DNA of 11,094 nt. Source: Amoeboradix gromovi X-113 (lineage: Eukaryota; Fungi; Sanchytriomycota). This document shows, one piece after another, positions 3,164-9,048 of this stretch. The translations under genes and the position numbers were made by a program. Position 1 is the first letter of the stretch; each line of letters opens with the position of its first letter. The notes under the pieces were generated by a model. That model ran no database searches, was not told the origin of the DNA, and worked only from the letters and a program-made list of their open reading frames with translations. Location: contig JADGIF010000318.1 of the NCBI GenBank assembly GCA_018985225.1, forward strand, positions 1 to 11,094. The letters run 5' to 3'.

Positions 3164-3808
3164 ATGACAAAGTGTGAATTACTGGACGGGTTCGCGATAA
3201 TAATACAGGGAATACTGGCATTGGTAGCATTCTCATCACTGCTAATAAAGAGACAGAGGGAGACACCTAGGAGACCATTAATGATATGGATGATGGATAC
3301 GAGCAAGCAAGCATTGGGGGCATCATTCATACATTTTATGAACATATTGTTTTCTTTGGATGCGGAAGTGAATCCGTGTGGGCAGTACATACTGAACATA
3401 ATATTAGATACGACAATAGGTGTTTACATACTTTTGATCATACACTCGTCAATGTACAGGCTAGTGAACAGGTGGGTTGGCATAAGTAGTGGATACTATG
3501 GTGGGGAGAGTCCACAGCTTAAGATATGGATGGGCCAATTTCTGATATATTTAATAGCATTGACGAGTATGAAATTTCTGGTTTTATTGATAATAAAATT
3601 TGGACATTTCGGAGAAATAGTAGAGACACTGCTATTTAGCATGAACGAAAAGGTACAAATTGTACTTGTGATGTTCATTATACCATTGATTATGAATGTT
3701 GTGCAATTCTGGTTAATTGACCAAGGAATTAAGTTCATGACTGTACAAAGATACTTGGAAATTGTAGACGAGGAAACCATAGACGCAGGTAGTGAGAAGG
3801 ACGAATAA
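3164..3808 (+). CDS. STIMATE/TMEM110 family multi-pass membrane protein (yeast YPL162C-like), 214 aa
   Basis: Family motifs LLDGFAIIIQG, LLIKRQRETPRRPLMIWMMDTSKQ, HFMNI, NPC..Y.LNIILDTTIGV, SGYYG..PQLKIW..Q and VMFIIPLIMNVVQFWLIDQ.IK, with about five hydrophobic segments. Confidence 0.9.
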   Translation: MTKCELLDGFAIIIQGILALVAFSSLLIKRQRETPRRPLMIWMMDTSKQALGASFIHFMNILFSLDAEVNPCGQYILNIILDTTIGVYILLIIHSSMYRLVNRWVGISSGYYGGESPQLKIWMGQFLIYLIALTSMKFLVLLIIKFGHFGEIVETLLFSMNEKVQIVLVMFIIPLIMNVVQFWLIDQGIKFMTVQRYLEIVDEETIDAGSEKDE

Positions 3809-3834
3809 ATATAGTGACTGTAATTAGTTTATTA

Positions 3835-6549
3835 TTATGGCTTAAAATCTTTGAGCTCCTTAAAGTCTCTATCAGACGACCTCAATGAATCCATACTTGG
3901 CTTTTGACTCATTAGAGTAGGTTCTTCTAAAAACTTCTTTTTCTTTTTAGGTCCCTCCAGCATCATGTCAATTACTATGTTGAACCCATCATTCCATGCT
4001 TCCAATGTTTCTGAGTCTAACTCGTCTTGCAGCATAAACTTAAGGCTTTTAATAACTGCAGATTTTAGAAAATTAAACATTTCTGGAGTAGTTTTGTATT
4101 CAATTATATGCTTTCTGCCCAGCTCTCGTATTCTATCCTCATACTCATCTAGAAATTCTATTTTTTTAACCATTACGTTCATCATTCCGCCAAAAGCTTT
4201 AGATTTTACGAATATATTGGGGAACATCGCCTGCAATTTGGCATCTTCTTGAAATAAATAGTCATAAAAAACCAGAGAAAACACTGTAGTAGGACTGCTG
4301 GATTCGTTTAACAACTCCGGATCAAGGAACTTAAAGTCAATTCTACTCAAGTCCTGTTTCTTTACTTCTAACTTCTGCCATGTTTTCAGCATTAAAGATG
4401 ACTGAATAGGAGTAATCTTGTTCTTTTTAATTTTATTGCTACCGCTACTCGTTTCCGAGTATCTTTTTTCTTTTTTAATCGGTCCATCAATCATGTACGA
4501 TGATATCTGCTCAAATGCTTCTTTAAATGCATTTATCTCGTCAACTCCAAATTCCTCCTGTAGGAATTCTTTTAAAGTACTGATAATTGCATTGGATAAG
4601 TACGGATAGTACTCTGATTTAACACCATATTTTTCTGCGTGTTTCTTTCCCAACTCTCTGATTTTGTCCTCGTATTGATCCAAAAATTCAATTTTTTCAA
4701 TCAAAGTAAACATCAGTCCTGTAAACGCTGCAGACTGTAATTCAGCGGTTGAAAACAATGGTTGCAACTCGGAATGTTCCCAAAATAAGTTGTCGTAGAA
4801 TTTGATACAAAAAACTGTCTGAATCGACAATCTTTCATCTCCCTTACTCTGCAGCAGCTGCTGATCGAGTCTTCGTAGCCTGATTTCAGTGATTGAGACT
4901 TTCTTAGTTAATAGGTGATCCCAACTCGATCTTATTAATTGTACTTGCTCGGCGGATATTCCGTTGTTGACTTCAACTATAGAAAATCTCTGGTGTTTAT
5001 TTGATTCGTCAGTCATCATAGAAATGACAATGTTGAATGCTGTCTTCCAGCATCTTTGGACATGCTCGGTATTTCTTTCCATTAAAAATTCGCTTATAGT
5101 TCGCAAAATTGAATCTGTAAACTTTGGCATAAGATTCACTGATACCTTTATTTTCATTAAATGAATTCTACCTACTTCCTTAAATTTCTTTATATTTTGT
5201 GGATTGAATTCTGAGTTAAACAGTACAGCGTGTATCATTGCTATGAAAGAGCGTCTTCTAATTACTTCTGTTGGAAAATAAACTCTAAATGACGGGTTGT
5301 CGTAAAATAGATTGTCATAAAAGCGCAGAGTAAACAGGTCTGTGTTCGTTATGCTTTTTTCAAGATCGGGGTTACTCTTATCCACATTTGTTAGTCTGTT
5401 GTAGTTATTGCGAATATCTATGCACCTGAATCGGAACTCGGTGCACTTGGATACCTTTATGAGTTCCCAGGATCGATGCAAGATGTCTAGCTCGTCTGAA
5501 GACAGACTCTCTTTCACAGCAGGTTTGAAATTGGATGATTTAACATTATCACTCAGAAGCAACTGAAACGTAGTTTTCAGAAATGATTGCCAGCAGGTTC
5601 TTGCATCTTCTAAAAAACTCTCATCAAGAAGAATTTGGAAAGTAGAGATGAGAGTGTCTATATAGCATTCGCTTTGAGAAGCCTTCAATTTGTATAACTC
5701 AAAGTATTTTCGTGCAATACTACTTATAATTCCTTCATGCGCAGTGTAATCATAGCTGTAGCTTAAAGTGCAGTCAATCAAATCAGAGAATAAATTGTAT
5801 TGCTTTGAAAAGCCGTTGAAAATATGTTTTAAAGCCGGTTCTTTTATGAAAAGCAAGTCGTAGAATTTTATGCATAACAAAGCTTTGATATCTGGTTTTC
5901 CCTCTAACACCCTCATCGCTAATACAAACTGTTGCTCAACTCCTTTGACATTTAACGTATTGGTGCTCAACGGCAGCTTAGTTAATTTTTCCCAAGTGTC
6001 GTTCATTAAATCTATTTGCTCAAACGTAGCGTCTCTTTGCTTTTTATTCTTCTTTTTAGGACCTTCTATCATCATCTCAATTAAAGGTAGTAAACAACTT
6101 GTCCAACTAGATTCATAAACTGGTAAAAATTCCTCTTTTAAAAACTCCTTGATGGTCAGTATTAGCACTGCAACTAATTGCGAATACATTTCCGGTCTCA
6201 CTTTTAGTTTTTCGGTATGTTTTCTTCCAAGTTCCCTCAGTTTGTCTTCGTTTTCATCTAAAAATTCCGATTTTTTCATTATAGTATTTATTATCCCATT
6301 AAATGCTTTAGCTTGCTTTGTCACATCTTTAAAATGCTCTCTAAATAACGGATATTTGTAAAATAAATTATCATAAAATTTTATAGTAAATATTCCAATC
6401 GTATCCAATCCTTTGAATAGTTGTCGGTCTAATACAAAGAGTATTAATTTATTCTCATCAATTTCCAATAACCGTACGCGTTCCCAGCTCTCTTGAACTA
6501 AAGTTATTGATTCTGAGGAAGGTCGATATGAAGTCGACTTTCTAAACAT
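3835..6549 (-). CDS. Five-domain tandem globin protein (3/3 flavohemoglobin/single-domain-globin-like domains, no reductase), 904 aa from first ATG
   Basis: Five ~175-aa repeats, each with A-helix (S/T)W, B-helix FYDxLF, CD1 Phe, F-helix GRKH/ARKY/GRIH/GKKH/GRKH and H-helix W/F...M/L. The ORF-track start at 6582 is TTG; the first ATG is at 6549. Confidence 0.9.
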   Translation of the reverse strand: MFRKSTSYRPSSESITLVQESWERVRLLEIDENKLILFVLDRQLFKGLDTIGIFTIKFYDNLFYKYPLFREHFKDVTKQAKAFNGIINTIMKKSEFLDENEDKLRELGRKHTEKLKVRPEMYSQLVAVLILTIKEFLKEEFLPVYESSWTSCLLPLIEMMIEGPKKKNKKQRDATFEQIDLMNDTWEKLTKLPLSTNTLNVKGVEQQFVLAMRVLEGKPDIKALLCIKFYDLLFIKEPALKHIFNGFSKQYNLFSDLIDCTLSYSYDYTAHEGIISSIARKYFELYKLKASQSECYIDTLISTFQILLDESFLEDARTCWQSFLKTTFQLLLSDNVKSSNFKPAVKESLSSDELDILHRSWELIKVSKCTEFRFRCIDIRNNYNRLTNVDKSNPDLEKSITNTDLFTLRFYDNLFYDNPSFRVYFPTEVIRRRSFIAMIHAVLFNSEFNPQNIKKFKEVGRIHLMKIKVSVNLMPKFTDSILRTISEFLMERNTEHVQRCWKTAFNIVISMMTDESNKHQRFSIVEVNNGISAEQVQLIRSSWDHLLTKKVSITEIRLRRLDQQLLQSKGDERLSIQTVFCIKFYDNLFWEHSELQPLFSTAELQSAAFTGLMFTLIEKIEFLDQYEDKIRELGKKHAEKYGVKSEYYPYLSNAIISTLKEFLQEEFGVDEINAFKEAFEQISSYMIDGPIKKEKRYSETSSGSNKIKKNKITPIQSSLMLKTWQKLEVKKQDLSRIDFKFLDPELLNESSSPTTVFSLVFYDYLFQEDAKLQAMFPNIFVKSKAFGGMMNVMVKKIEFLDEYEDRIRELGRKHIIEYKTTPEMFNFLKSAVIKSLKFMLQDELDSETLEAWNDGFNIVIDMMLEGPKKKKKFLEEPTLMSQKPSMDSLRSSDRDFKELKDFKP

Positions 6550-6659
6550 GTAGTGGCTTATATGTTGGGGCGCAATATGCAATAAGCAGAAAAGCGTTTT
6601 AGAGTAAGCGCATTAATAGGCAGAACTAGTCAGGTAACAACTCGCTATCACTAATTCTT

Positions 6660-6830
6660 TACTTTTCCAGCCGGGTCTTCCTGATTTCCGAGAAAATCGA
6701 GAATTTCCACAGAGAAACTAGTAGTGCTATATGCTCCGTTACAGTGATTGGTCACGCTTGCACTACCCTGAGGTGGGATTGAATAAGGATGCAGACACTT
6801 GATGTATATGCTCCTTGCTGCCATATGGTC
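6660..6830 (-). ncRNA. Putative Fanzor omegaRNA scaffold plus ~20-nt flank-derived guide (boundaries approximate)
   Basis: Conserved ~110-150 nt between the Fanzor C-terminus and the element end. Stems visible: GTAGTGC/GCACTAC (6721-6727 with 6760-6766), GTGA/TCAC and terminal GATT/AATC. The position matches known TnpB/Fanzor omegaRNA loci. Expression is not shown. Confidence 0.55.
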
Positions 6831-7259
6831 TCAATCTATCTCCAAATGACAATTGGTACAAGTGTAGGTTTCTAAGTTGGTTTCTCTAGAGTACCATACT
6901 TTGTACATGTCTGACTAGTAAATGCTTCATTACATTCAATTATCGTCTTTCCTCTTTGTTTACACTTGAACTTCAAGCATTGCTTGAATGCGTAATGGGA
7001 CATTGTAGCCATGTTTCTTGCGACCTTGCTCGACAAGCTACTTAGCATCTGGCTCCTATTGAACGAGGGTAAGTATATCAGATCATACGTCTTTGTATGC
7101 TGTACCTGCTAGTTATTTCTTTAGATTTAATTTACCATTTGCGAAACGGAAGAATATCGAGTGTTTAAGGCATTAGAAAAATCTGGAAAAGTCTTGAAAT
7201 GATACAAAAATATATACAAATTCGCGATAAATGATTTATTCAAGAAAATAATCAAGCTG
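6680..7259 (-). mobile_element. Non-autonomous IS607/Fanzor2-derived element, copy C (both ends present, longest Fanzor remnant)
   Basis: Left end CAGCTTGAT (7259) is shared with copy D (CAGCTCGAT). A partial HTH (KSKEITSRYSI) is joined at ~7094 to Fanzor coding sequence. Right end AATCAGG at 6680 matches copy A and, with one substitution, copy B. Confidence 0.9.
6792..7096 (-). pseudogene. Fanzor2 (eukaryotic TnpB-like RNA-guided nuclease) C-terminal fragment: RuvC-II region, Zn finger, RuvC-III
   Basis: Manual translation 7096->6875: TKTYDLIYLPSFNRSQMLSSLSSKVARNMATMSHYAFKQCLKFKCKQRGKTIIECNEAFTSQTCTKYGTLEKPT*. After a frameshift: LETYTCTNCHLEID*DHMAARSIYIKCL. Contains SHY.FKQ.L..K, E..TS.TC, CxxC and D(R)D..AAR.I hallmarks. 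Lesions: frameshift near 6875, C->Y in the first CxxC, stop at 6831-6833. Confidence 0.9.
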
Positions 7260-7457
7260 TCAGTATTGCCTCATACGTGCCACCATTCTCATGACAGCTG
7301 TAACAGGTTTGGAAGCATTGCGTTCTGAAGTAAACTACCATCGCAACAATAATCACCTTTATTTCAAATTCTTTCACTGTCTCATATCGCTTTCGGTAGA
7401 CTACACTGGAGCTGCTTTTCTAATTGAATTGATCACTGAGCTGAGTTTGCCGGTGGT

Positions 7458-7494: not shown

Positions 7495-8730
7495 TTATTT
7501 AATGATTTGCAAGTAATACTTGACCAATTCAGAGTCCATATCTTTCAAAAAATTCATAATCGTTGCTACTTGAGTAACTTTATATTTCTCATGCTTGGTC
7601 AACTCTGTTCTTAAATGGACTATCTCATCTGGTACCTTTGTGATTCCCATACGCTTAAAGATAATCTCGTCACTCAAATTATCTAGTAAAATGGATTTAG
7701 CCTGAAAGTCTTCCACTGGTAAGTCTGGCTGAGCTTCGACAACAGGAGTTGATAAAGAAGAAGGATTATTTAGGCTATTAGTCAATGAATCCATAGAGTC
7801 CTCATCAGCATCGTCTAAGCTTACAAATGCATCCCTGGAGACAGTCGTGTTTGGAATTGAAGGTGTTGAAGGTTTCTTGTACATCAGGTGCGCTACACTG
7901 CTGGATGAGCTGTCTTTTGACTTGTCCTTGCGTTTACGTTGAGTAGAAGTCTTAGTAGTTCCATATTTCTCATTCATAAATGACATCAAAGTCTTGAAGT
8001 CAAAATCACTCAAACAAGAACTCAAATGGAAAACAGCCTCACTATGGTCAATCGGGATTAGAGAATTACATTTAGAACACTCAAAGAACTCCTCGCCACA
8101 CTCATACACCTTGGAACCATGGTTAAACAAGTAACTATCAAAAATCTTCTCCTTCTTCTTTTTGTGATGTTCGTGAACAGGTGCTGGGGGTGGTGGCGGC
8201 AAGTCTTGCAATTTGTCCGGATTAGTGGCAGTTCTCAACAAGCTCAAGTAATGCTGACGTTCAACTACAGTCATCCCATGGCAACCGCTTTTTAGATGAT
8301 AGTGAACGCCCGTTTTGACAGAAACTAATACCGCACTGCATTTAGCACACTCGAAAGAGCCATTGCCAGCATTGTCATAAAATGATCCAAACTCCTGGGC
8401 AGCAGTCTTCCAAGGACTCATCAATACTTCCCGAACTTCTAATTTACGTTTCTTAGAAGGGCTTTGAGGAAAATGCTTACGCGGGCGACCTGGTCTCTTG
8501 TTCTCAACTGGAATGTCCATTACCGGTTTTGTAGCAGTTTGCAACAACTTCTTAATCTCGGCGCGTTCCTCGTCCGATCGATCGCAATTGGCTAAAAAAT
8601 GGTTGTAAATGCCCATACTGTCGTTGCTATCAAGAACTAGATCGCAATGATTGCAAGTAACTTTGGTATTTTTCTGTCTCAAAAAAGAACTTTGTTTAAG
8701 CAAAGCGATGTGAAGCGTAAAGTTTTTCAT
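7495..8730 (-). CDS. Putative DNA/chromatin-binding protein with three C2HC (BED-like) zinc fingers and an AT-hook, 411 aa
   Basis: CNHC-x14-H-x4-C, CAKC-x13-H-x4-C and CSKC-x13-H-x3-C; AT-hook KRPGRPRK; basic NLS-like KKRK, KKKKEK and RKRK; Pro- and Ser-rich linkers. First ATG is at 8730. Confidence 0.7.
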   Translation of the reverse strand: MKNFTLHIALLKQSSFLRQKNTKVTCNHCDLVLDSNDSMGIYNHFLANCDRSDEERAEIKKLLQTATKPVMDIPVENKRPGRPRKHFPQSPSKKRKLEVREVLMSPWKTAAQEFGSFYDNAGNGSFECAKCSAVLVSVKTGVHYHLKSGCHGMTVVERQHYLSLLRTATNPDKLQDLPPPPPAPVHEHHKKKKEKIFDSYLFNHGSKVYECGEEFFECSKCNSLIPIDHSEAVFHLSSCLSDFDFKTLMSFMNEKYGTTKTSTQRKRKDKSKDSSSSSVAHLMYKKPSTPSIPNTTVSRDAFVSLDDADEDSMDSLTNSLNNPSSLSTPVVEAQPDLPVEDFQAKSILLDNLSDEIIFKRMGITKVPDEIVHLRTELTKHEKYKVTQVATIMNFLKDMDSELVKYYLQIIK

Positions 8731-9048
8731 CAACCAGGGAGGGGGTTACAAAAACATTCTGGAAACAATTAAGATTCTAATCGCAAATTAGCCGATTACG
8801 CCATTGAGCACATGTGAGTGACTGCAAACCAACAGGAGAACGGTAGAACTAAAAGTATTACACTAAATTCTAGGATCTTGAAATAAGGATATTGTTAGGC
8901 TTTGCATGGAGATTTTATGCAATATTAAAATACCTTACTCTGACACATTGGGCAAACCCTTACTAACTGTGTTCACAGTTTGCCGTTCTTTTCCTAAATT
9001 TATGGTGGCTTTTGACGCTTATTACCTTGCCCATAAAAAACTAAAAAT

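What the first reader, a model, noticed from the sequence alone, without database searches (positions are those of the whole stretch)
3835..6549. Penta-globin: five concatenated globin domains without reductase or signalling domain
Seen: five globin repeats at about 6522-6061, 6030-5551, 5505-5010, 4959-4483 and 4416-3953, with F8 positions 171-181 aa apart and Lys-rich linkers (EGPKKKNKK, DGPIKKEK, EGPKKKKK). There is no signal peptide and no FAD/NAD module. Established: fungal and microbial 3/3 globins are usually single-domain, flavohemoglobin or sensor fusions, while concatenated globins are known mainly from invertebrate extracellular hemoglobins. Inference: an independently evolved intracellular multi-heme protein for O2/NO sensing, storage or redox relay. 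I do not recognise it as a described family.
Basis: partly seen in the sequence, partly recalled or inferred. Interest (0 to 1): 0.8.

Follow-up and report, generated by a model that had tools for sequence, protein, structure and literature searches.

The report
Five-domain globin of a sanchytrid fungus
One intron-free gene of a small alga-parasitising fungus chains five haemoglobin-like domains into a single soluble protein, an arrangement I found in no paper on fungi; it arose independently of animal and protist chained globins, and its function is untested.

Summary
Window 3838-6549 (minus strand) is one uninterrupted 904-aa reading frame holding five homologous globin units of about 160 aa. 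They belong to the flavohaemoglobin-like single-domain (F) lineage. There is no reductase, sensor output, signal peptide or membrane segment.

D1, D3, D4 and D5 keep His F8, Tyr B10, Phe CD1 and Phe E11. D2 keeps the globin fold and distal pocket but has Tyr at F8.

The gene is not an assembly fusion. Syntenic orthologues of 59-62% identity lie on three metagenome contigs. A 31%-identical, colinear paralogue lies on another contig of the same genome. Synonymous sites are saturated while amino-acid change is limited in every domain.

All 20 sanchytrid domains form one group (100/98), apart from the chained globins of kinetoplastids, a diplonemid, cyanobacteria and a gammaproteobacterial MAG. 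The nearest single-domain relatives are fungal. The five-domain plan therefore arose inside this fungal lineage, before the two paralogues split.

Chained globins are more widespread in microbes than the literature I read suggests, with up to 20 domains in one metagenomic protein.

Function is inferred only: a multi-haem O2/NO-reactive protein reduced in trans.

This scan had already reported the paralogue on other DNA of this genome (s1-537492).

The parts
3838..6549 (-). Coding sequence of the 904-aa penta-globin (group A); stop codon at 3835-3837
   Evidence: Open frame. The ATG start is shared with orthologue P0002. One independently built 4045-nt Logan contig spans 3300-6707 with only two synonymous differences.
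6052..6525 (-). Globin domain D1 (aa 9-166): His F8 = H111 (6217-6219), Tyr B10, Phe CD1, Gln E7, Phe E11
   Evidence: Pfam Globin 8.7e-9; pocket table.
5542..6033 (-). Globin domain D2 (aa 173-336): F8 is Tyr (Y282, 5704-5706); distal Tyr B10, Phe CD1, Gln E7 and Phe E11 are kept
   Evidence: No Pfam hit alone. It matches an HMM of the other domains at 3e-24. AF2 pLDDT is 86.6 and Foldseek gives 3s1i at TMt 0.84. Tyr F8 is also present in orthologue P0002.
4990..5508 (-). Globin domain D3 (aa 348-520): His F8 = H463 (5161-5163), Arg at E7, and the longest A-B insert
   Evidence: Pfam Globin 1.5e-3 and Protoglobin 5.8e-4, both below cut-off. It is homologous to the other domains. F8 His is kept in all four full-length proteins compared.
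4474..4962 (-). Globin domain D4 (aa 530-692): His F8 = H637 (4639-4641). It is the only domain with the complete flavohaemoglobin-type proximal set of His F8, Tyr G5 and Glu H23
   Evidence: Pfam Globin 1.8e-11. It gives the best PDB matches, 3wfw and yeast flavohaemoglobin 4g1b. Pocket table.
3943..4419 (-). Globin domain D5 (aa 711-869): His F8 = H814 (4108-4110), Lys at E7
   Evidence: Pfam Globin 1.8e-9; pocket table.
3838..3942 (-). Lys-rich, predicted disordered C-terminal tail (aa 870-904), beginning KKKKK
   Evidence: pLDDT is below 50 over 867-904; basic runs are listed.
3164..3808 (+). Convergent neighbour gene of the STIMATE family, used as a synteny anchor
   Evidence: Pfam STIMATE 1.7e-28. 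It is 76% identical to the gene next to orthologue P0002 on L001.
7495..8733 (-). Upstream neighbour gene (412 aa, no Pfam family), the second synteny anchor
   Evidence: It is 73% identical to the ORF directly upstream of the orthologous globin on L003.

Best explanation
Window 3838-6549 (-) is a real, intron-free nuclear gene. The gene encodes a soluble 904-aa protein of five tandem 3/3 globin domains of the F (flavohaemoglobin-like, single-domain) lineage. Each domain carries an insert of roughly 25-30 aa between helices A and B, and short Lys-rich linkers follow D1, D4 and D5. Shown: the unit was multiplied to five inside the sanchytrid lineage from a globin most like the fungal single-domain globins, before the gene duplicated into two paralogues. 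All five units have stayed under purifying selection. Inferred: D1, D3, D4 and D5 each bind haem b through His F8. Their distal pockets (Tyr B10 with Gln, Arg or Lys at E7, and Phe E11) are of the kind that holds O2 tightly and supports NO dioxygenation in flavohaemoglobins and Hell's Gate globins. Inferred: D2, with Tyr at F8 but a conserved distal pocket, binds haem in a ferric, non-O2-carrying state or has a structural role. Because there is no FAD/NAD module, ferric haem would have to be re-reduced in trans, for example by one of the cytochrome b5-domain proteins encoded in the genome. The most likely role is high-capacity O2/NO handling (NO detoxification and/or O2 scavenging or buffering) in a parasite attached to an oxygen-evolving alga. 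My odds are about 0.95 for gene and architecture, 0.75 for haem in four domains, and 0.35-0.4 for the O2/NO role; the single confidence figure of 0.55 is for the statement taken as a whole.
For: Gene and architecture. The family profile matches the globins 3wfw, 3s1i and 3ubc at 4e-24 to 5e-23 without gaps from helix B to helix H. Helix A matches separately, which exposes the A-B insert. The D2 fold is supported, and the pocket residues are. Not an artefact: a single Logan contig spans the whole ORF at even depth. Orthologues P0002 (62%) and P0003/L003 (59%) have both neighbours conserved. Paralogue L010 is colinear at 31% identity. Its orthologue P0004 in NCBI assembly GCA_043777775.1 is syntenic. 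Both gene types occur in the same two metagenomes. Selection: pS is 0.75-0.91 (saturated) against pN 0.16-0.32 in every domain of the window's gene. Origin: the 20 sanchytrid domains form one group at 100/98 and in 100% of bootstrap trees. D4 (100/100) and D2 (96/87) group by position across the paralogues. The highest-scoring single-domain hits and the rows nearest the sanchytrid branch are fungal: Umbelopsis, Quaeritorhiza, Polychytrium and Saitoella. Context: no Globin (PF00042) match outside these two genes and no truncated-globin match in the genome, ferrochelatase is present, and there are at least 10 cytochrome b5 matches.
Against: There is no RNA run and no protein data, so expression, haem content and ligand chemistry are untested. 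The full-length model is weak (pLDDT 65.7, pTM 0.30), so the arrangement of the domains is unknown. Phe at E11 in every domain, and Arg or Lys at E7 in D3 and D5, depart from the Leu E11 / Gln E7 of characterised NO dioxygenases. Only D4 keeps the Tyr G5 / Glu H23 proximal network. My E7/E11 assignment rests on the ungapped alignment to 3wfw; the alignment to yeast flavohaemoglobin places gaps differently. The globin evolves faster than its neighbours (59-62% against 73-76% identity). Domains have lost F8 His repeatedly across the family, which fits a role that does not need every haem. The organism name comes from earlier notes of the scan. I checked it only against the published genome size and GC content.
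Confidence: 0.55

Rival explanations
1. It is an oxygen store or buffer rather than an enzyme. Four high-affinity haems per chain hold O2 and release it in the dark, or keep free O2 low next to a photosynthesising host. This would resemble the myoglobin-like behaviour reported for some animal multi-domain globins.
For: The protein has many haem sites on one chain and no catalytic partner domain. Tyr B10 / Gln E7 pockets are associated with tight O2 binding (family knowledge; residues). Annelid tetra-domain globins are described as high-affinity, low-cooperativity, myoglobin-like proteins (PMC4503718).
Against: A single small cell gains little from storage unless the protein is very abundant, and abundance is unknown. 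The heterogeneous E7 residues (Gln, Arg, Lys) and the loss of His F8 in one or two domains of each paralogue argue against simple maximisation of O2 capacity.
Confidence: 0.2
2. It is a redox or gas sensor, or a scaffold. Haem-ligand state changes the conformation of the chain, and the His-less domains and basic linkers mediate binding to partners, membranes or nucleic acids. The KKKNKK and KKKKK runs resemble nuclear-localisation or polybasic motifs.
For: The Lys-rich linkers and the EGP-K-rich motif after helix H are conserved. A conserved A-B insert with an alternating hydrophobic pattern occurs in every unit and is absent from the bacterial globins. The domains that have lost His F8 are still under selection.
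Against: There is no recognisable output or interaction domain. The domains belong to the F lineage, not the sensor (S) lineage; Protoglobin hits are weak and below cut-off. No partner is implied by gene neighbourhood, since the conserved neighbours are unrelated housekeeping-type genes.
Confidence: 0.12
3. It is a haem reservoir or haem-buffering protein that sequesters free haem, with gas chemistry incidental.
For: There are several haem pockets per chain. Tyr ligation at D2 would favour stable ferric haem, as in human Hb M variants with His F8 to Tyr (textbook knowledge; residue).
Against: The genome has its own ferrochelatase, so haem supply is endogenous. The distal residues Tyr B10, Gln E7 and Phe E11 are conserved, and these matter for ligand chemistry rather than for holding haem.
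Confidence: 0.07
4. It is an artefact: an assembly fusion of separate globin genes, a contaminant contig, or a decaying pseudogene.
For: The published genome was assembled from whole-genome-amplified DNA, which can create chimeras (PMC8371127). No RNA evidence exists.
Against: One independent contig spans the ORF. The same five-domain frame with the same neighbours occurs on other contigs and in other samples. Synonymous sites are saturated while nonsynonymous change is limited. No stop codon occurs in 2.7 kb.
Confidence: 0.02

Closest known systems
Fungal single-domain F globins (Mucoromycotina SD Fgbs of Hoogewijs et al. 2012, PMC3287990; database entries from Umbelopsis, Quaeritorhiza, Polychytrium, Saitoella)
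   Same: They share the 3/3 F-lineage fold. They give the highest per-domain scores (Umbelopsis, 82.6 bits) and lie next to the sanchytrid branch in the trees. The Umbelopsis and Quaeritorhiza (P0039) proteins, the ones I aligned, also share a shorter version of the A-B extension.
   Different: They have one domain per protein, of 166-254 aa. Here five units are fused, each with an A-B insert 14-25 aa longer, and Phe replaces Leu at E11.
Hell's Gate globins of Methylacidiphilum infernorum (PDB 3s1i HGbI, 3wfw HGbRL globin domain, 3ubc)
   Same: These are the best solved relatives by sequence profile (4e-24 to 5e-23), ungapped from helix B to helix H, and by fold for D2 (TMt 0.84). Tyr B10 and Gln E7 align.
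   Different: They are bacterial single-domain proteins or a fusion to a Roadblock/LC7 domain. They have no A-B insert and no tandem repetition.
Flavohaemoglobins (yeast 4g1b, E. coli 1gvh, R. eutropha 1cqx)
   Same: The globin module is homologous. D4 keeps the Tyr B10, Gln E7, His F8, Tyr G5 and Glu H23 set.
   Different: There is no FAD/NAD reductase module. The NCBIfam flavohaemoprotein model scores 18-45 bits against a cut-off of 432. Only one FAD_binding_6 match exists in the genome, and it lies elsewhere.
Animal multi-domain haemoglobins (Artemia nine-domain, bivalve, nematode and annelid polymers; echinoderm multi-domain globins)
   Same: They have several covalently linked 3/3 globin domains made by internal duplication (PMC4503718, PMC4527676, PMC1865544). 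Sea-urchin and starfish proteins appear among the hits.
   Different: Most are extracellular respiratory pigments of animals. The sanchytrid protein has no signal peptide and comes from a unicellular fungus. Its domains form their own group. No echinoderm domain is in either tree: Patiria domains failed my length filter and the sea-urchin protein was not entered.
Unannotated chained globins of microbes: Bodo saltans CUG06439.1, Papus, Sulcionema, Prorocentrum, a 14-20-domain metagenomic protein, Okeania and gammaproteobacterial three-domain proteins; Guillardia theta three-globin chimeras (PMC4101818)
   Same: They have tandem F-type globin domains in unicellular organisms and no reductase.
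   Different: They have separate origins. The kinetoplastid-type units, the diplonemid units, and the cyanobacterial and gammaproteobacterial units each form groups of their own in the tree. The 14-domain protein's units are nearly identical to each other, which points to recent amplification, whereas the sanchytrid units are only 16-40% identical. The Guillardia proteins carry a putative cytochrome b5 N-terminus.

Membership tests
Globin superfamily, 3/3 fold (Pfam PF00042) | Sequence match above the family's curated cut-off | tested here: met
   The whole protein scores 109 bits against a cut-off of 22. D1, D4 and D5 pass singly, D3 scores 19.4 bits and D2 gives nothing alone. D2 and D3 are tied to the others by a family HMM and by the profile search of PDB.
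Globin superfamily, 3/3 fold (Pfam PF00042) | Myoglobin-type helical fold, helices A to H | tested here: met
   The D2 model has pLDDT 86.6 and pTM 0.83. Its top PDB matches are all globins, with 3s1i at TMt 0.84. The full-length model shows the same eight-helix pattern five times.
Globin superfamily, 3/3 fold (Pfam PF00042) | Proximal His at F8 and Phe at CD1 (criteria used by Vinogradov, Hoogewijs and co-workers, PMC4101818) | tested here: inconclusive
   Phe CD1 is present in all five domains. His F8 is present in D1, D3, D4 and D5, but D2 has Tyr. Four domains therefore meet the criterion and one does not.
Globin superfamily, 3/3 fold (Pfam PF00042) | Binds haem b | not testable with these tools
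   This needs recombinant protein and a haem assay.
Flavohaemoglobin (NO dioxygenase) | C-terminal FAD- and NAD-binding reductase module fused to the globin | tested here: not met
   No such Pfam domain is present. NCBIfam NF009805 matches only its globin part, at 18-45 bits against a cut-off of 432.
Globin-coupled sensor / sensor single-domain globin (S family) | S-lineage globin with a C-terminal transmitter domain | tested here: not met
   No transmitter domain is present. The best solved relatives are F-lineage proteins. Protoglobin hits are below cut-off.
Truncated (2/2) multidomain haemoglobins (Hade et al. 2017, cited in PMC7475203) | 2/2 fold, Pfam Bac_globin PF01152 | tested here: not met
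   The protein gives no PF01152 match and neither does the genome. The fold is 3/3.
Invertebrate extracellular multi-domain haemoglobin | Secretion signal and shared descent with animal globins | tested here: not met
   The N-terminus is hydrophilic with no hydrophobic segment. The domains group together next to fungal single-domain globins. Echinoderm domains themselves were not in my trees.

The most novel reading that the evidence does not exclude
The five units are not redundant copies but a division of labour on one chain. D4 would be a flavohaemoglobin-like catalytic haem. D1, D3 and D5 would be tuned O2/NO-binding haems with different E7 residues. D2 would carry a Tyr-ligated ferric haem acting as an internal redox or peroxide-handling site. 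The conserved strand-like A-B inserts would hold the units in a fixed assembly. Together this would be a self-contained multi-haem device adapted to the daily swing between oxygen supersaturation and hypoxia on an algal host. It would also be one case of a wider, undescribed tendency of unicellular eukaryotes to build chained globins.
Probability: 0.1. Interest if true: 0.75.

Novelty: new variant of a known kind. Interest (0 to 1): 0.5.

Why it matters
Fungal globins have so far been catalogued as flavohaemoglobins, single-domain F or S globins and rare truncated globins (PMC3287990). Chained globins have been treated as an invertebrate speciality linked to oxygen transport (PMC4503718). This gene family shows a separate, old and conserved origin of a five-domain globin in an early-diverging, genome-reduced fungus. 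There, the only globin-family (PF00042) matches found are these two penta-globin genes. The repeated, lineage-specific loss of the proximal His in some domains offers a natural experiment on what haem-less or Tyr-ligated globin domains do. The same search also found 3- to 20-domain globins in kinetoplastids, a diplonemid, a dinoflagellate and bacteria, and I found no paper describing these. Chained globins in microbes may therefore be a general but overlooked theme.

Tried and rejected
RNA evidence: the run search found one DNA run and no RNA, so a single transcript could not be shown.

Inter-domain arrangement: the full-length AlphaFold model was too weak (pTM 0.30) to say anything about it.

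ESM Atlas: the feature search gave only sub-threshold single- and multi-globin clusters from oomycetes, ciliates and foraminifera (0.83-0.87), which I did not use as evidence.

dN/dS: a ratio could not be computed because synonymous sites are saturated, so only the proportions pN and pS are reported.

L003 split: I suspected a frameshift or micro-intron in the orthologue on L003, but the split is a run of N in the scaffold.

Assembly fusion, contamination and pseudogene were considered and rejected, as were flavohaemoglobin, sensor-globin and truncated-globin membership (see the rival explanations and membership rows).

Literature: searches for chained globins in fungi or protists returned only animal cases, the Guillardia chimeras and a citation to multidomain truncated haemoglobins. 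The library lacks many subscription papers, including the 2013 review of microbial eukaryote globins, so "not described" is provisional.

Taxonomy: I did not establish the taxonomy of the Logan and JGI hits without names. The labels 'bact' and 'eugl' for some unnamed rows are my assumptions.

Full report
**Observation**

The window holds one long open frame on the minus strand, 3835-6582. Its first ATG is at 6549 and the stop is TAA at 3835-3837. This gives a 904-aa protein that begins MFRKS, as does its closest relative.

Pfam finds only Globin: 109 bits for the whole protein. D1, D4 and D5 each pass the cut-off when scanned alone. D3 falls just below it and D2 gives nothing alone. NCBIfam matches only the globin part of the flavohaemoprotein model, far below its cut-off.

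An alignment of the five units from four full-length family members shows one repeated plan of about 160 aa. An HMM built without any D2 sequence finds the window's D2 at 3e-24. A model of D2 made with the domain alignment is confident (pLDDT 86.6, pTM 0.83). Its best solved matches are globins, led by oxygen-bound Hell's Gate globin I with a target-normalised TM of 0.84.

There is no hydrophobic N-terminus and no membrane segment.

**Is it a real gene?**

The neighbours are eukaryotic: a STIMATE-family gene and an EXOSC1/CSL4 gene. The assembly has 10.55 Mb in 1319 contigs.

Earlier notes of this scan name the organism as the sanchytrid Amoeboradix gromovi. The published genome of that species has 10.5 Mb at 36.3% GC, made from whole-genome-amplified cells (PMC8371127). 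That agrees with this assembly, but it is the only check I made.

The one public run that holds the stretch gives an independently built 4045-nt contig. It covers 3300-6707 in one piece at even depth and differs from the window at two synonymous sites.

A word search of 5.8 billion proteins found two relatives of suitable length, P0002 (909 aa, 62% identity) and P0003 (59%). Their contigs come from two ENA metagenome assemblies. They carry the same downstream STIMATE gene (76% identical) and the same upstream 412-aa gene (73% identical). The apparent split of the L003 gene is a run of N in the scaffold.

Between the window's gene and P0002, synonymous differences are saturated (pS 0.76-0.91). 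Nonsynonymous differences are 0.16-0.32 in every domain, with D2 the fastest. Assembly fusion, contamination and pseudogene are therefore rejected.

**A family of two paralogues**

A Globin scan of the whole genome matches only two loci. One is this gene. The other is an open frame on contig C1218 that reads 911 aa from its first ATG. That second gene is colinear with the window's protein at 31% identity.

It has its own orthologues. P0004 lies in NCBI assembly GCA_043777775.1 with the same G-alpha and ribosomal-protein-L6-family (Pfam Ribosomal_L6) neighbours. A near-identical copy and a third, truncated copy occur in the same two metagenomes that hold the window-type genes. So at least two further sanchytrid-like organisms carry both types.

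This scan had already followed up the C1218 paralogue (s1-537492). The present gene is its sister and is not a new discovery of the architecture.

**Haem pockets**

I assigned positions from the ungapped alignment to 3wfw.

- Every domain of the window's protein has Phe B9, Tyr B10, Phe CD1 and Phe E11.
- E7 is Gln in D1, D2 and D4, Arg in D3 and Lys in D5.
- F8 is His in D1, D3, D4 and D5, and Tyr in D2. P0002 also has Tyr at F8 in D2.
- Only D4 also keeps Tyr G5 and Glu H23, the proximal network of flavohaemoglobins.

In the paralogue group, D1 has lost its F helix. D4 has Gln or Val at F8, and in one species D5 has Phe there. D3 is the only unit with His F8 in all four proteins. The units that lack His evolve fastest but remain constrained.

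The alignment to yeast flavohaemoglobin places gaps differently around E7. The E7/E11 assignment is therefore the likelier of two readings.

**A family-specific insert**

The domain profile matches the Hell's Gate globins in two pieces: helix A, and helices B to H. About 30 profile positions between them are unmatched.

Every sanchytrid unit carries this A-B insert, with an alternating hydrophobic pattern ending in Asp. The Umbelopsis and Quaeritorhiza single-domain globins have a shorter version, and a globin of typical bacterial length (141 aa, source not looked up) has none. Its structure is predicted with low confidence.

**Origin**

A profile of three full-length proteins was searched against 1.84 billion representatives. 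After the sanchytrid-type proteins, the scores fall to proteins whose high totals come from many weak domains:

- a 2461-aa metagenomic protein with 14 units, whose cluster-mate has 20
- proteins of Bodo saltans, Papus and Sulcionema
- a Prorocentrum protein
- echinoderm multi-domain globins
- three-domain proteins of Okeania and of a gammaproteobacterial MAG

The 14-unit gene lies on a contig of eukaryotic genes, nearly all on one strand.

Per domain, the best single-domain hits are fungal: Umbelopsis, Quaeritorhiza, Polychytrium and Saitoella.

In a careful maximum-likelihood tree of 68 domains, the 20 sanchytrid units form one group (100/98, and 100% of bootstrap trees). D4 (100/100) and D2 (96/87) group by position across the two paralogues. 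D3 and D5 are compatible with the same pattern. The degenerate D1 of the paralogue sits on a very long branch. The kinetoplastid-type units (Bodo, Papus and two unnamed metagenomic proteins), the diplonemid units, the cyanobacterial units and the gammaproteobacterial units each form their own groups (quick tree).

The five-unit plan therefore arose within this fungal lineage before the paralogues split, and independently of the other chained globins in the tree. No echinoderm domain was in either tree. I assumed some unnamed rows to be bacterial or euglenozoan.

**How it probably works**

Shown: five globin folds on one soluble chain, four with complete haem pockets, no reductase or output domain, and long-term purifying selection.

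Context: the genome encodes ferrochelatase, so it can make haem. It has at least ten cytochrome b5-domain matches and one FAD_binding_6 match that could reduce ferric haem in trans. It has no Globin (PF00042) match outside these two genes and no truncated-globin match.

From established family knowledge, Tyr B10 with Gln E7 gives tight O2 binding and supports NO dioxygenation in flavohaemoglobins and related single-domain globins. Replacing His F8 with Tyr in human Hb M variants locks haem in the ferric state.

Inference: the protein is a multi-haem O2/NO-reactive protein, most likely for NO detoxification and/or O2 scavenging or buffering in a parasite attached to a photosynthetic host. D2 would be either a ferric-haem site or a structural unit.

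The rivals are pure oxygen storage, a sensor or scaffold role using the basic linkers and inserts, and haem buffering. None can be excluded without experiments.

**Comparison with the literature**

The 2012 census of 165 fungal genomes lists flavohaemoglobins, single-domain F globins (Mucoromycotina only), S globins and two T globins. It reports no chained globins, and no F globins in zoosporic fungi (PMC3287990).

Multi-domain globins are reviewed as sporadic in invertebrates (PMC4503718). Guillardia theta has two chimeric proteins with three globin domains each and a putative cytochrome b5 N-terminus (PMC4101818). Multidomain truncated haemoglobins are cited in PMC7475203. The sanchytrid genome paper does not mention globins or haem.

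Searches for chained globins in kinetoplastids, diplonemids or fungi found nothing. The library misses many subscription papers.

**Verdict**

This is a new variant of a known kind: a fungal penta-globin family of independent origin, conserved across sanchytrid-like genomes. Its function is untested. The scan had already met it through the paralogue.

Noticed in passing
window 6650-7300: The stretch between the globin start and the upstream gene carries a highly repeated element. Summed contig word depth is 10,000-40,000 there, against 74 over the gene. The upstream gene ends about 945 nt from the globin ATG here, whereas on L003 only 34 nt separate it from the start of the globin's open frame. 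The element therefore looks like an insertion into the globin's upstream region. Other notes of the scan treat it as a MITE-like or Fanzor-associated family.
   Followed up: partly
L014:10001-17386 (JGI metagenome 3300066132): A 2461-aa protein has 14 nearly identical tandem globin units, and its cluster-mate P0153 has 20 units in 3326 aa. It lies on a compact contig of eukaryotic genes (Golgi pH regulator, START, CS, DEAD helicase), nearly all on one strand, which suggests a kinetoplastid-like organism. I found no paper on such proteins.
   Followed up: partly
Proteins P0010 (Bodo saltans CUG06439.1), P0019 (Papus ankaliazontas), P0009 (Sulcionema specki), P0015 (Prorocentrum cordatum), P0159 (Okeania), P0021 (gammaproteobacterial MAG): Chained F-type globins of 3 to 7 units occur in several unicellular eukaryotes and in bacteria. 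Those included in the tree (all but Prorocentrum) cluster by lineage, which suggests repeated independent multiplication.
   Followed up: partly
P0039, P0040 (Quaeritorhiza haematococci), P0066 (Polychytrium aggregatum): Chytrids encode single-domain F-type globins. The 2012 census found such globins only in Mucoromycotina among fungi. One of these chytrids is also an alga parasite.
   Followed up: no
G000:C369:14691-15656 (L016): The ferrochelatase match is interrupted by a single TAA. This may be one of the very short introns that other notes of the scan report for this genome.
   Followed up: no
G000:C578:29589-31608 (L011): The full-length 18S rRNA gene matches the eukaryotic model over about 2020 nt, longer than the 1831-position model. 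I could not compare it with a reference collection.
   Followed up: no
window 7495-8733 (-): A conserved 412-aa gene has no Pfam family and is 73% identical to its orthologue on L003. It has three repeated Cys/His-containing segments and a proline- and lysine-rich middle.
   Followed up: no
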